Shown one piece after another: positions 4,256 to 5,920 of a DNA stretch of 39,882 nt. The stretch comes from Octopus sinensis (lineage: Eukaryota), in assembly GCF_006345805.1 (NCBI RefSeq), contig NW_021835701.1:1-39882 (forward strand), given 5' to 3'. Both the position numbers and the translations under genes were made by a program. The notes beneath the pieces were generated by a model. It saw only the letters and a list, made by a program, of their open reading frames with translations. It did no database searches and was not told the origin of the DNA. Each line of letters opens with the position of its first letter. The stretch's first letter is position 1.

Positions 4256-5920
4256 ATGGCTAACGGAAACGATACACGTCCGGATCAGGTTTTTCAGGAC
4301 GCTATTCATGGATCCATGCAATTTTCACCACTCTGTGTTAAAATTATTAATACAGTACAATTTCAGAGATTACGTAATATCAAACAACTAGGTTTGTGTT
4401 ATTACGTTTATCCATCAGCTTCACATAATAGATTTGAGCATTGTCTGGGAACATGTCATCTAGCTGGGAAAATGATTCGCCATCTTAAGCAGCAAGATTC
4501 CGGTCTGGAAATATCTGATCGAGATATACTGTGTGTTGAAATCGCTGGTTTGTGTCATGATTTAGGACATGCGCCTTTTTCTCATGCCTTTCAAGAAATT
4601 ATCAACGAGTATCGCAAGGAAAATGGAGGTAAAAAGTGGGAACATGAAGATGTATCATGTGAAATGTTAGAGCATCTTTTTGAAATGAACCAACATTTTG
4701 AAGGAGAACTTAAGCCTGGTGAAATTGGTTTCATAAAAGATCTCATTACTGGTAAACCAGAAAAATCTGACAAAAAAAAATTTTTTTACCAAATCGTCAA
4801 CAATGCAGACTATAACATCGACGTTGATAAATGGGATTACCTGGCCAGAGATTCCCATTTTCTTGGCATTGGAACATCCTTTGATCACGAAAGAATGATG
4901 AAAATGTCCAAAGTAATAGGTGGTGAAATATGCTACAGAGACAAAACGCTTAAAAATTTCTATGATATGTTTTATTCACGATATCGACTACATAACACGG
5001 CTTACCAACACAAAACTGTTCTCCTGCTTAATAAACTACTTGGCGATGTTTTGAAATCCGCACATAAAAAACTGAAAATTTTCGATAGGGTCAAAAAAAT
5101 GGAGGAATTTACTTATTTTACAGATAGTATTTTGGAGGAGATATTAAATAGTAAGGGCAATCAAGATCTCAAAGACGCCCTGAAGGATATAATCAAACGG
5201 TCTTTTAAATACAAAGGGACCGTCACAGACAAAATCAAGGGCACATTCACGGGCACAGTAACGGGCATATTCGAACTCGGAGATACGGAGGGAAATATCT
5301 TGTACCCAATTGAGGGTACAGGAGATGACGTTGCAGTCCTGAAAAAGATGAAGGTCACTATCAATGATAAAACCTTGGACACACCGGAGAGCAAAATGCA
5401 GAGAGATATCACCGAAGAGCAAAATGCAGAGATATATGCTAAAATCTTGTACACCTCGGAGAGCGAAATGCAGGGCAATATCCAGGGCAGAATCAATGGT
5501 ACAATCTCGGAGACATCGGGAATAAAAAAGATCGAGGGCAAAATCAATGTTAAAATATTGAGCACATCGGAGAGCAAAATGCTGAGCAATATCGAGGGCA
5601 AAATCAATGGTAAAATATTGGGCACATCGGAGAGCAAAATGCAGAGCAATATCGAGGGCACAATCAAGGGTACCATCCAAAAAATAATAAACAGCAGAGA
5701 CCAAGGATCAGACCCGGATATAGTCAAGAAGACAGACGTGATCTGCATAGCCCGTTTTGACTATGGAGCTAAAGAAAATAACCCACTATTGAACATACCA
5801 TTCTATACAAGAAATGAAAGGAAATATACGTACGATAACCATGAAGAACTGGAAAATATGCTTTTTCTGCCAGAGAAATTTGAAATGAAAACCAGTCATT
5901 GTTTTGAAATAACAAAATAA
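4256..5920 (+). CDS. SAMHD1: SAMHD1-like HD-domain dNTP triphosphohydrolase, copy 1 (554 aa, single ORF, no SAM domain, internal repeat insertion)
   Basis: Motifs match human SAMHD1 as recalled: DAIHG, QFQRLRNIKQLG, ASHNRFEHCLG (R164/H167), LCHDLGHAPFSH (H206/D207/H210/H215), WEHE (H233), IDVDKWDYLARD (D311/K312/Y315/D319), CYRDK, YDMFYSRYRLHNTAYQHK (R366/H370/Y374), RSFKY, FDYGAKENNP..PFY, LPEKF. The symbol denotes the family; this is probably a paralogue rather than the 1:1 orthologue. Confidence 0.95.
   Translation: MANGNDTRPDQVFQDAIHGSMQFSPLCVKIINTVQFQRLRNIKQLGLCYYVYPSASHNRFEHCLGTCHLAGKMIRHLKQQDSGLEISDRDILCVEIAGLCHDLGHAPFSHAFQEIINEYRKENGGKKWEHEDVSCEMLEHLFEMNQHFEGELKPGEIGFIKDLITGKPEKSDKKKFFYQIVNNADYNIDVDKWDYLARDSHFLGIGTSFDHERMMKMSKVIGGEICYRDKTLKNFYDMFYSRYRLHNTAYQHKTVLLLNKLLGDVLKSAHKKLKIFDRVKKMEEFTYFTDSILEEILNSKGNQDLKDALKDIIKRSFKYKGTVTDKIKGTFTGTVTGIFELGDTEGNILYPIEGTGDDVAVLKKMKVTINDKTLDTPESKMQRDITEEQNAEIYAKILYTSESEMQGNIQGRINGTISETSGIKKIEGKINVKILSTSESKMLSNIEGKINGKILGTSESKMQSNIEGTIKGTIQKIINSRDQGSDPDIVKKTDVICIARFDYGAKENNPLLNIPFYTRNERKYTYDNHEELENMLFLPEKFEMKTSHCFEITK
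5372..5674 (+). repeat. Coding minisatellite of ~60-bp/20-aa units inside SAMHD1-like copy 1 (23603-23908 in copy 2)
   Basis: Units TLDTPESKMQRDITEEQNAE, ILYTSESEMQGNIQGRINGT, ISETSGIKKIEGKINVK (partial), ILSTSESKMLSNIEGKINGK, ILGTSESKMQSNIEGTIKGT. The DNA motif tcggagagcaaaatgc.gagcaatatcgagggca.aatcaa recurs at 60-bp spacing. Confidence 0.92.

What the first reader, a model, noticed from the sequence alone, without database searches (positions are those of the whole stretch)
5219..5734. ~170-aa repeat-built insertion in the C-terminal lobe of the dNTPase
Seen: between FKYKG (aa 317-321) and DVICIARFDYG (aa 494-504) there are about 170 residues, where human SAMHD1 has roughly 40-45 (recalled). 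The segment contains 4-5 units of a 20-aa repeat (IL.TSESKMQ.NIEG.I.G.) preceded by GTVTDKIKGTFTGTVTG. The frame stays open in both copies, and the one indel is a whole codon. Inference: the alternating I-x-G-x-I-x-G-x-I pattern suggests a beta-solenoid or beta-roll. It could be a new ligand-binding, decoy or polymerisation module replacing the lost SAM domain. I know of no SAMHD1 with such an insert, but could not search.
Basis: partly seen in the sequence, partly recalled or inferred. Interest (0 to 1): 0.8.

Follow-up and report, generated by a model that had tools for sequence, protein, structure and literature searches.

The report
Repeat-built loop insert in octopus SAMHD1
A young, octopus-specific copy of the antiviral dNTP-degrading enzyme SAMHD1 carries a ~150-residue surface loop grown from a short internal tandem repeat. 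The loop is translated, varies in repeat number and belongs to a gene clade under strong positive selection, but it has no confident fold or proven function.

Summary
The window looks like a whole Octopus sinensis scaffold with two tandem, intronless SAMHD1-like genes (554 and 555 aa). Both have 172 residues where human SAMHD1 has 39 and the nearest octopus paralogues about 20. The net insert (aa 327-479) is built almost wholly from repeats. A 12-nt x-I-x-G unit is nested in a 60-nt (20-aa) unit, and it was probably seeded from the native KYKGT codons. Unit number varies by one either way among copies and RefSeq isoforms.

A published octopus skin-mucus proteome contains a peptide spanning the insert's C-terminal junction, so the insert is translated. 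An exhaustive search of 1.84 billion proteins finds it only in O. sinensis/O. vulgaris paralogues.

AlphaFold gives a confident HD core but no confident fold for the insert. Long beta-strands with polar loops are weakly predicted. There is no support for a solenoid or beta-roll.

The insert-bearing clade evolves at dN/dS of about 3, in core and insert alike, and faster than its own flanks. Short-loop paralogues give 0.3-0.7.

Best reading: a coding minisatellite that lengthened a permissive surface hairpin of an intact dNTPase, possibly used as a variable surface in an arms race. That function is inferred. It is a new variant of a known kind.

The parts
4256..5920 (+). Copy 1 of the intronless SAMHD1-like dNTPase gene (554 aa + stop). 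Catalytic H62, H101-D102, H105, H110 and the DVDKWDY motif are intact.
5219..5734 (+).
5234..5692 (+). Net insertion relative to short-loop octopus paralogues (aa 327-479, IKGTF...QKIIN). The flanking GTVTD and SRDQGSD align with GTNED and ENDQDGK of the paralogues.
5230..5268 (+). Three 12-nt sub-repeats encoding KIKG-TFTG-TVTG. AAAATCAAGGGCACA matches the native KYKGT codons of a short paralogue (AAATACAAAGGCACA) at 12/15, so this is the likely seed of the repeat.
5339..5482 (+). Two older, degenerate 72-nt units (LKKMKVTINDKTLDTPESKMQRDI and TEEQNAEIYAKILYTSESEMQGNI).
5382..5437 (+). 28-nt x2 duplication read in two different frames (ESKMQRDI versus EEQNAEIY). The 24 aa it helps create are absent from paralogue P0002.
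5464..5521 (+). Unit MQGNIQG-RING-TISE-TSG. AF2 places strand 408-419 here.
5520..5529 (+). GAATAAAAAA run, an indel hot spot. It holds the codon indel between the two copies, has a different residue in every other copy, and is the frameshift site in O. vulgaris copy A.
5522..5641 (+). Two young 60-nt units (IKKIEGKINVKILSTSESKM and LSNIEGKINGKILGTSESKM). Each is (x-I-x-G)x3 plus a TSESKMQS loop.
5642..5692 (+). Terminal partial unit QSNIEGTIKGTIQKIIN. AF2 places strand 465-479 here.
5435..5794 (+). Patch holding 9 of the 24 substitutions between the two 13.5-kb duplicates, all nonsynonymous. Most of the states at these sites recur as two alternative types among copies of both species, which points to a gene-conversion or recombination tract.
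22487..24154 (+). Copy 2 of the gene (555 aa + stop).
23450..23968 (+). The insert in copy 2 (aa 322-494).
23903..23932 (+). Codons for GTIQTIINSR (aa 473-482), the tryptic peptide detected in O. vulgaris skin mucus. It spans the C-terminal junction of the insert.
1..13533 (.). First copy of the 13.5-kb tandem segmental duplication that carries the gene (99.7% identical to 18234-31761).
18234..31761 (.). Second copy of the 13.5-kb segmental duplication.

Best explanation
The segment is a lineage-specific coding minisatellite. In a recent ancestor of one clade of intronless octopus SAMHD1-like genes, the codons of the native KYKGT turn were duplicated by slippage. This turn starts a normally short (20-40 aa), length-variable surface loop of the C-terminal lobe. 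The resulting 12-nt x-I-x-G unit was amplified, then re-amplified as a 60-nt (20-aa) unit made of (x-I-x-G)x3 plus TSESKMQS. There was at least one out-of-frame 28-nt duplication, and unequal exchange continues. The product is a translated appendage of about 150 residues on a dNTPase whose catalytic residues are intact. Its first half is probably disordered. Its second half probably forms long beta-strands (one per repeat) joined by polar loops, extending the native hairpin outward.

Shown: the anatomy, the repeat hierarchy, copy-number variation, restriction to two sister species, translation, and dN/dS well above 1 in the clade.

Inferred: the seed, the beta-arm geometry, and the function. 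My best functional guess is that the insert is a fast-evolving, length-variable surface. It would change what binds this face of the enzyme (for example a pathogen-encoded antagonist, or partner subunits) rather than act as a conserved ligand-binding domain.
For: Anatomy and boundaries.

The loop is permissive. The median is 35 aa in 96 homologues and about 20 aa in the octopus paralogues, and a stingray homologue carries an independent 31-aa x3 triplication at the same place.

Repeat number varies. Relative to the two window copies, RefSeq X2 has one unit fewer (534 aa), while RefSeq X1 (574 aa) and O. vulgaris copy A have one more. No placement of the X1 or X2 gaps has GT-AG or GC-AG ends, so they are not splice products.

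The insert DNA occurs only inside these ORFs in all loci fetched, so there is no sign of a transposon origin.

Translation: peptide K.GTIQTIINSR.D, plus A0A6P7U4P1 (the RefSeq product of this scaffold) identified with 16 peptides in PMC11431876.

Exclusivity: exhaustive phmmer against 1.84 billion representatives returns only two octopus SAMHD1-like clusters and three low-complexity look-alikes.

Structure: HD core pLDDT above 90, with Foldseek TM 0.64-0.78 to SAMHD1. Insert residues 335-423 score below 50. Residues 424-480 score 53-76, with strands coinciding with the x-I-x-G triplets.

Selection: window copy versus P0002 gives dN/dS 3.2 overall (15 synonymous of 192 changes, p=3e-6), 3.6 in the insert (p=0.005), and 0 synonymous against 34 nonsynonymous in the repeat half. 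All 21 pairs among 7 copies give at least 1.6. The same code gives 0.3-0.7 for short-loop paralogues. The ORF diverges 9-14% where its flanks diverge 1.6-4.3%. The result is robust to the ts/tv ratio.

An intact 555-aa ORF exists in O. vulgaris.
Against: No fold is confidently predicted, and the insert alone scores pLDDT 32.

The excess of nonsynonymous change is not specific to the insert. The HD core shows it equally, and among the closest copies the insert is no more diverged than the flanks (0.6-1.3%). Selection may therefore act on the protein as a whole, with the insert a passenger.

Concerted evolution among units can inflate nonsynonymous counts in the repeat half.

Conservation of Ile/Gly scaffold positions against the other positions is only marginal (p about 0.06).

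Three of four tandem O. vulgaris copies are disrupted, two of them by frameshifts inside the insert, so the repeat is also a liability.

Only one insert peptide was found in the stored, truncated supplementary files.

No binding partner, activity or oligomeric state has been measured.
Confidence: 0.6

Rival explanations
1. Neutral passenger. The insert is a tolerated low-complexity expansion with no selected role. It persists because the loop is permissive and the repeat contains no stop codons in its reading frame.
For: AF2 confidence is very low over half of the insert and for the insert alone. The composition is a seven-letter alphabet (I, S, G, K, E, T, N) with no aromatic residues, Cys, His or Pro in the repeat half. 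The loop is length-variable across the family. Frameshifts arise inside it. Among close copies it diverges at the flank rate. GC3 is 56% against 31% in the core, as expected of young sequence that has not been shaped by codon usage.
Against: dN/dS in the insert is significantly above 1, not about 1 (5 synonymous of 63 changes, p=0.005). The frame and the unit pattern are kept in a paralogue only 62-67% identical over the insert. Most Ile positions are retained while the intervening positions change. The protein is abundant enough to be a quantified 'master protein' in mucus proteomics.
Confidence: 0.25
2. The repeats fold into a beta-solenoid or beta-roll that forms a new ligand-binding, decoy or polymerisation domain.
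For: The I-x-G-x-I-x-G-x-I periodicity is regular. Ile content is 19%, which is high for a disordered region. AF2 does predict beta structure on the repeats. Weak phmmer matches to other proteins with tetrapeptide-periodic G-x-[IV]-x repeats show that such periodic sequences recur elsewhere.
Against: Predicted strands are 12-17 residues long with 2-9-residue connections, which looks like a hairpin or meander rather than coils of a solenoid. Only 4-5 units exist. No Pfam solenoid or roll family matches at E<=1 and no PDB sequence matches. There is no Ca-binding GGxGxD motif. Confidence is too low to trust any topology.
Confidence: 0.1
3. The segment is not part of the mature protein. It is an intron or exitron that is spliced out, or an assembly or annotation artefact.
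For: 25 in-frame GT...AG pairs exist by dinucleotide alone. The RefSeq models on this scaffold are odd: one skips 60 nt and one joins copy 1 to copy 2. The scaffold is small and unplaced, with a 99.7% duplication.
Against: A tryptic peptide crosses the junction. The putative acceptors are purine-rich with no pyrimidine tract. The RefSeq gaps have no canonical splice ends. The same insert lies in open frame in two independent assemblies, on two O. vulgaris chromosomes and in two species. Every length difference between intact copies is a multiple of three.
Confidence: 0.03
4. The insert marks a decaying pseudogene lineage, and the high dN/dS reflects loss of constraint.
For: O. vulgaris copies A and B are frameshifted and copy C has lost its C-terminus.
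Against: Loss of constraint gives dN/dS of about 1, not about 3. Both window copies, L003, L005 and P0002 are intact over 532-555 codons with every catalytic residue kept. Peptides unique to this clade have been detected.
Confidence: 0.02

Closest known systems
Human/mouse SAMHD1 (e.g. PDB 7ujn, 4bzb, 6brg)
   Same: Same HD-domain dNTPase fold (phmmer 1e-74; Foldseek TM 0.64-0.74). It shares H167, H206-D207, H210, H215 and the DVDKWDY motif, and the same C-terminal-lobe strands flank the loop.
   Different: There is no SAM domain. The loop between human 459 and 499 is 172 aa instead of 39. Allosteric-site residues differ (K116->Q11, N119->Q14, D137->N32). The gene is intronless and tandemly amplified.
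Rhizophagus irregularis SAMHD1 (PDB 9mr6; PMC12042053)
   Same: It is the best PDB sequence match (3.9e-77) and is likewise a SAM-less SAMHD1.
   Different: 9mr6 has about 38 residues at this loop. The paper, which surveys the superfamily with a sequence similarity network, uses the word 'insertion' nowhere.
Short-loop octopus SAMHD1-like paralogues (P0005, P0006, P0008, P0012; four ORFs in L004)
   Same: They share 65-73% identity over the HD core. They are also intronless, SAM-less and tandemly clustered, with a related 5' leader.
   Different: They have only about 20 aa between YKYKGT and IFCKA.FDxG. They evolve at dN/dS 0.3-0.7. Several carry HN instead of HD at the catalytic motif.
Stingray (Hemitrygon akajei) SAMHD1-like P0069
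   Same: The same loop is enlarged by tandem repetition of a 31-aa unit, three copies.
   Different: The unit is unrelated in sequence and is a copy of the native linker. It is known only from a gene model, with no protein evidence, and was not examined further.
Variable-loop length changes in primate restriction factors, e.g. the 20-aa tandem duplication in the v1 loop of African green monkey TRIM5alpha (recalled from the literature, not checked here)
   Same: A tandem duplication within a surface loop of an antiviral protein that is under positive selection.
   Different: It is a different protein and fold, with a single duplication rather than a hierarchical array. There the loop is known to contact the viral target, whereas nothing is known here.
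Beta-helical repeat proteins with [IV]-x-G periodicity (bactofilin, left-handed hexapeptide repeat)
   Same: Alternating aliphatic/Gly pattern with a short period.
   Different: There is no Pfam match at E<=1, the period is 4 nested within 20, and the AF2 topology is not helical.

Membership tests
SAMHD1-type HD-domain dNTP triphosphohydrolase | HD domain with the metal-binding H...HD...D residues | tested here: met
   Pfam HD at 3.3e-12. H62, H101-D102 and D194 are present and align to human H167, H206-D207 and the DVDKWDY motif.
SAMHD1-type HD-domain dNTP triphosphohydrolase | SAMHD1 fold including the C-terminal lobe | tested here: met
   AF2 core pLDDT above 90. Foldseek E about 2e-29 and TM 0.64-0.78 to 4rxs and 9mr6. 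The C-terminal 60 aa align to human 499-546.
SAMHD1-type HD-domain dNTP triphosphohydrolase | N-terminal SAM domain (vertebrate architecture) | tested here: not met
   No SAM hit in Pfam, and the ORF starts 10 residues before the HD core. Other molluscs (Haliotis P0067, Mercenaria P0097) do have SAM.
SAMHD1-type HD-domain dNTP triphosphohydrolase | Guanine-specific allosteric site 1 (K116, N119, D137, Q142, R145) | tested here: inconclusive
   Q142 and R145 are kept (Q37, R40), but K116->Q11, N119->Q14 and D137->N32. PDB 6txa holds human D137N with XTP bound, so activator specificity may differ.
SAMHD1-type HD-domain dNTP triphosphohydrolase | dNTPase activity and nucleotide-dependent tetramerisation | not testable with these tools
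   Needs recombinant protein.
Beta-solenoid repeat families (hexapeptide LbH, bactofilin, pentapeptide) | Match to the family profile, with coils of 3 short strands per 18-20 residues | tested here: not met
   hmmscan of aa 322-493 at E<=1 returns only an unrelated CTD9 hit at 0.19. AF2 strands are 12-17 residues long.
RTX-type beta-roll | Nonapeptide GGxGxDxUx calcium-binding repeats | tested here: not met
   No GGxGxD in the sequence, and the period is 4/20 rather than 9.
Coding minisatellite / variable-number tandem repeat in an ORF | Head-to-tail DNA repeats with a unit length that is a multiple of 3, inside an open frame | tested here: met
   60-nt and 12-nt periods. The frame is open, with 0 stops.
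Coding minisatellite / variable-number tandem repeat in an ORF | Unit-number differences between alleles or paralogues | tested here: met
   534, 554/555 and 574 aa forms differ by exactly one 20-aa unit. O. vulgaris copy A has an extra unit, and P0002 lacks 24 aa. Allelic variation within a population was not tested.
Spliceosomal intron / exitron | Absent from mature mRNA and protein, with canonical splice signals | tested here: not met
   A junction-spanning peptide was detected. The candidate acceptors lack a pyrimidine tract. RNA-level data are not available here.

The most novel reading that the evidence does not exclude
The repeat array is an adaptive, expandable variable surface grafted onto an antiviral dNTPase. 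Gain of the insert coincided with a shift of this gene clade from purifying selection (dN/dS about 0.5) to strong diversifying selection (about 3). Unit gain and loss, plus gene conversion among tandem copies, would generate length and sequence variants that alter recognition by a pathogen antagonist or drive beta-sheet-mediated higher-order assembly. That would make it an invertebrate restriction factor diversifying through a VNTR-like mechanism.
Probability: 0.25. Interest if true: 0.8.

Novelty: new variant of a known kind. Interest (0 to 1): 0.6.

Why it matters
SAMHD1 is a textbook vertebrate restriction factor whose arms race with lentiviral Vpx is read from positive selection at its termini. 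Almost nothing is known about invertebrate homologues.

This locus shows an octopus-specific, intronless, tandemly amplified SAMHD1-like clade. It evolves faster in its coding sequence than in its flanks, and it has acquired a translated, length-variable repeat appendage at a loop that is short elsewhere.

If the appendage is functional, it offers a tractable case of how a new protein module is born from a few native codons. It would also show how an innate-immune enzyme diversifies in an animal without adaptive immunity. If it is neutral, it is still a clean, datable example of how far a structured enzyme tolerates minisatellite growth in a surface hairpin.

Tried and rejected
- **Word-indexed search with the insert alone:** it returned nothing, not even the known identical paralogues. 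I treat it as uninformative and replaced it with the exhaustive phmmer search.
- **PDB and Pfam searches with the insert:** only chance-level hits (GDAP1 at 0.11, CTD9 at 0.19).
- **AF2 of the insert with a 4-row alignment:** mean pLDDT 32. I did not run a fold search on it because the matches would be meaningless.
- **The three non-octopus phmmer hits (P0125-P0127):** rejected as homologues. They are low-complexity proteins with 4- or 7-residue G-x-[IV]-x periodicity and no other similarity.
- **Further insert peptides in the proteomics supplements:** none of 12 predicted tryptic peptides was found, but the stored files are truncated.
- **Transposon or foreign origin:** rejected. The insert DNA is absent from all flanks and from the short-paralogue cluster.
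- **The cluster of 9 copy1/copy2 differences as fresh mutations:** rejected. Most of the states at these sites recur as two types among O. vulgaris and other O. sinensis copies, so the cluster is a conversion or recombination patch.
- **dN/dS above 1 as a coding or mutation-spectrum artefact:** rejected. Short-loop paralogues give 0.3-0.7 with the same script. The expected synonymous fraction stays at 0.18-0.29 for ts/tv of 0.25-3, against 0.08 observed.
- **Rfam and tRNA scans of the window:** empty.
- **Literature searches:** no description of this insert was found.
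Full report
**What the window is.** The 39,882-base window is microsatellite-rich eukaryotic DNA. It contains a 13.5-kb tandem segmental duplication, 1-13533 against 18234-31761, at 99.7% identity. Each copy holds one long, uninterrupted ORF: 4256-5920 (554 aa) and 22487-24154 (555 aa). The closest database proteins are annotated SAMHD1-like proteins of Octopus sinensis and O. vulgaris. Two RefSeq products, XP_029657249 (X1) and XP_029657250 (X2), are recorded on a contig of exactly 39,882 bp. 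The window is therefore almost certainly a whole unplaced O. sinensis scaffold carrying LOC115231345.

**The host protein.** The protein is a SAMHD1-type HD-domain dNTPase. Pfam HD scores 3.3e-12. phmmer gives 3.9e-77 to the fungal SAMHD1 structure 9mr6 and about 1e-74 to human and mouse SAMHD1. An AlphaFold2 model built from 96 homologues has pLDDT above 90 over aa 10-320 and about 90 over aa 494-550. Foldseek places it on SAMHD1 structures with TM 0.64-0.78. The catalytic residues H62, H101-D102, H105, H110 and the DVDKWDY motif are present. There is no SAM domain.

**Checking the observation.**
- On the full-length human chain 7ujn_A, query 322 aligns to human 459 and query 495 to human 499. 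Human SAMHD1 thus has 39 residues where this protein has 172.
- The fungal enzyme has about 38 residues here.
- The nearest octopus paralogues have only about 20 (YKYKGTNEDENDQDGKHEKIFC). Against them the net insertion is aa 327-479, nt 5234-5692.
- In a 96-sequence alignment the median length of this loop is 35 residues.

**Repeat architecture.**
- TRF reports the 60-nt period at 5531-5672, and at 23666-23906 in copy 2.
- The repeat finder adds a nested 12-nt sub-repeat encoding x-I-x-G. The resulting pieces are KIKG-TFTG-TVTG, NIQG-RING-TISE, NIEG-KING-KILG and NIEG-TIKG-TIQK.
- It also finds four 72-nt units starting at 5339.
- Nearly the whole insert is therefore repeat-derived, with older units more degenerate toward the 5' side.
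- A 28-nt x2 duplication at 5382-5437 is read in two frames, giving ESKMQRDI and then EEQNAEIY. This shows the array grew by DNA-level slippage rather than by shuffling of a protein domain. Paralogue P0002 lacks those 24 aa.
- The first sub-unit, AAAATCAAGGGCACA (KIKGT), matches the native KYKGT codons of a short-loop paralogue, AAATACAAAGGCACA, at 12 of 15 positions. I infer that the array was seeded from the host's own turn codons.
- The insert DNA is found nowhere else in the window or in five related loci except inside these ORFs.

**Is it coding?** An open frame alone is weak evidence here, because two antisense frames are also nearly stop-free. Stronger evidence comes from several directions.
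- Every length difference between intact copies is a multiple of three.
- The insert is in frame in a paralogue on another O. vulgaris chromosome that is only 69% identical overall (P0002, locus L001). It is also in frame in an intact 555-aa O. vulgaris ORF (locus L005) and on a second O. sinensis scaffold (locus L003).
- A published TMT proteome of O. vulgaris skin mucus (PMC11431876) lists A0A6P7U4P1 as a master protein with 16 peptides. This is the X2 product of this scaffold.
- That proteome reports the peptide K.GTIQTIINSR.D, which spans the C-terminal junction of the insert. It is encoded by copy 2 at 23903-23932.
- The two RefSeq isoforms are not splice variants. X2 equals copy 1 minus one 60-nt unit. 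X1 joins copy 1 to copy 2 and so gains one unit. No possible placement of either gap has GT-AG or GC-AG ends. They most likely reflect transcripts with one unit fewer or more than this assembly.
- In-frame GT...AG pairs do exist by dinucleotide alone, but their acceptors are purine-rich. Minor exitron use cannot be excluded without RNA data.

**Distribution.** An exhaustive phmmer scan with the insert against 1.84 billion representative proteins found five hits. Two are octopus SAMHD1-like clusters. Three are unrelated low-complexity proteins with G-x-[IV]-x periodicity.
- In the full-length search, only O. sinensis and O. vulgaris proteins cover the insert. The O. bimaculoides and Argonauta homologues that were read and aligned are short-loop.
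- On O. vulgaris chromosome OX597824.1, one intact copy (L005) lies near an array of three copies 7.2 kb apart (L002).
- In that array, copy A has an extra 20-aa unit and a frameshift at the A-run. Copy B has a frameshift in the repeats. Copy C loses its C-terminus directly after the insert.
- The repeat therefore generates both length variants and casualties, which fits a birth-and-death family.
- The same loop is enlarged in three other predicted SAMHD1-like proteins. A stingray model has a 31-aa unit in three copies, which looks like a genuine parallel. An amphioxus model looks like a segmental duplication, and a chiton model looks like a retained intron. The site is evidently permissive, but the octopus sequence is unique.

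**Structure.** In the full-length AF2 model, aa 335-423 score below pLDDT 50 and aa 424-480 score 53-76.
- The predicted strands are 317-335, 408-419, 422-438, 443-455 and 465-479. They fall exactly on the x-I-x-G triplets, and the TSESKMQS segments form the connections.
- Folded alone with four paralogous rows, the segment scores a mean pLDDT of 32, with the same strand tendency.
- This weakly suggests that the native hairpin is extended into a meander of long strands.
- It gives no support for a solenoid or beta-roll. No Pfam or PDB sequence match exists.
- The repeat half is 19% Ile with abundant S, G, K, E, T and N, and has no aromatic residues, Cys, His or Pro.
- Between the window copy and P0002, most Ile/Gly positions persist while the intervening residues change. 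The contrast is marginal (p about 0.06).

**Evolutionary regime.** This is the most striking result.
- Nei-Gojobori dN/dS between the window copy and P0002 is 3.2 overall (15 synonymous of 192 changes, p=3e-6). It is 3.3 in the HD core and 3.6 in the insert (p=0.005). The repeat half has 0 synonymous against 34 nonsynonymous changes.
- All 21 pairwise comparisons among seven insert-bearing copies give at least 1.6.
- The O. sinensis copy against the intact O. vulgaris ORF shows 16 nonsynonymous and 0 synonymous changes.
- The same script gives 0.3-0.7 among the short-loop paralogues, and between them and the insert-bearing clade.
- The expected synonymous fraction is 0.18-0.29 over a wide range of ts/tv, against 0.08 observed.
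- The ORF has diverged 9-14% from P0002, while its immediate flanks have diverged 1.6-4.3%.
- The clade is young. dS is 0.05 within it and 0.3-0.4 to the short-loop genes.
- Acquisition of the insert thus coincides with a switch to strong diversifying selection on the whole protein.
- The signal is not specific to the insert. Among the closest copies the insert diverges only at the flank rate, whereas the HD core (aa 1-321) is the most divergent part. Concerted evolution between units may also inflate counts in the repeat half.

**The two window copies.** Of 24 substitutions across the 13.5-kb duplicate, 9 fall within 5435-5794 (Poisson p about 3e-10), and all ten differences in the ORF are nonsynonymous. 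Most of the states at these sites recur as two types among other copies of both species. The patch is therefore a conversion or recombination tract, not a burst of new mutation.

**Interpretation.** I conclude that the finding is a real, translated, lineage-specific coding minisatellite that lengthened a permissive surface hairpin of an intact SAMHD1-like dNTPase. The most likely role, which is inferred and not shown, is a fast-evolving, length-variable surface in a gene clade engaged in some conflict. The main rival is a tolerated passenger.
- The 'replacement for SAM' idea is contradicted, because the short-loop paralogues examined are SAM-less and much older than the insert.
- No paper in the searchable library describes the insert.
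- It is a new variant of a known kind: SAMHD1 combined with a coding tandem-repeat expansion.

Noticed in passing
window 4256-5920 vs L001 10001-11599; L002, L003, L005: The whole insert-bearing SAMHD1-like clade, not just the insert, shows dN/dS of about 3, and its coding sequence diverges 2-6 times faster than its flanks. Short-loop paralogues analysed with the same script give 0.3-0.7. This is arguably more remarkable than the insert itself.
   Followed up: yes
window 4286-4375 (aa 11, 14, 32): Allosteric-site-1 residues differ from human: K116->Q11, N119->Q14, D137->N32. Human D137N has been crystallised with XTP instead of GTP (PDB 6txa), so the octopus enzymes may use a different activator. 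All octopus and Argonauta sequences in alignment A1 that cover this position have N there.
   Followed up: partly
L004 10001-11185, 27119-28102 (-), 32481-33665 (-); proteins P0005, P0006, P0008, P0015: Several short-loop paralogues carry CHNLGHGPFSY instead of CHDLGHAPFSH. The catalytic Asp of the HD motif is Asn and a nearby His is Tyr, yet the genes are intact and under purifying selection (dN/dS 0.3-0.6). They may be pseudoenzymes.
   Followed up: partly
window 5562-5642 and 5621-5672 joined to 23796-23847: RefSeq isoforms X2 (534 aa) and X1 (574 aa) of LOC115231345 need a 60-nt gap and an 18-kb copy1-to-copy2 join respectively. No placement of either has canonical splice ends. They look like alignment artefacts of transcripts with one repeat unit fewer or more.
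   Followed up: yes
L002 2521-4244, 9785-11447, 17155-18672: Three tandem O. vulgaris copies 7.2 kb apart are all disrupted. Two have frameshifts inside the repeat, one of them at the A-run. The third diverges right after IVKKTD and is fused into an 805-aa gene model. These could be real pseudogenes or homopolymer errors in the assembly.
   Followed up: partly
window 5144-5704 (-) and 5161-5748 (-); also 23375-23938 (-), 23392-23982 (-): Two antisense ORFs of 186-196 aa run across the insert. They are most simply a by-product of a purine-rich repeat that lacks stop codons in those frames.
   Followed up: partly
window 5219-5734 vs 4256-5218: Third-position G+C is 56% in the insert against 31% in the HD core, and first positions are 83% purine. 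The insert has not acquired the host gene's codon usage.
   Followed up: no
window 936-1762 and 19168-19994; 3720-3893 and 21953-22124: A very long imperfect (ACC)n array of about 276 copies lies upstream. A (TAC)n array of about 58 copies lies only about 360 nt upstream of each start codon.
   Followed up: no
window 7984-8338 vs 8912-8561 (and 26218-26562 vs 27141-26800): A pair of 350-nt inverted repeats at 93% identity, separated by about 220 nt, lies 2 kb downstream of each gene copy. It looks like a foldback or MITE-like element.
   Followed up: no
window 39-477, 9510-9925, 15094-15622: These stretches match their own reverse complement at 75-87% identity (palindromic, partly microsatellite-based).
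   Followed up: no
window 4229-4255; L002 2494-2520; L004 upstream of each ORF: The in-frame leader just upstream of the ATG (VRYILNNFI here, VRYFPDNFI or VRYFPDNLI in short-loop genes) is conserved between old paralogues. The duplication unit therefore includes a conserved 5' leader, although the CDS is intronless.
   Followed up: no
proteins P0069 (Hemitrygon akajei), P0074 (Branchiostoma), P0048 (Liolophura): Other predicted SAMHD1-like proteins have 97-139 residues at the same loop. One is a 31-aa x3 tandem repeat, one an apparent segmental duplication, and one a probable retained intron. The loop is a recurrent site of enlargement or mis-annotation.
   Followed up: partly
PMC11431876 supplementary tables: The product of this locus (A0A6P7U4P1) is reported as significantly more abundant in the skin mucus of senescent and aquarium-kept O. 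vulgaris than in wild animals.
   Followed up: no
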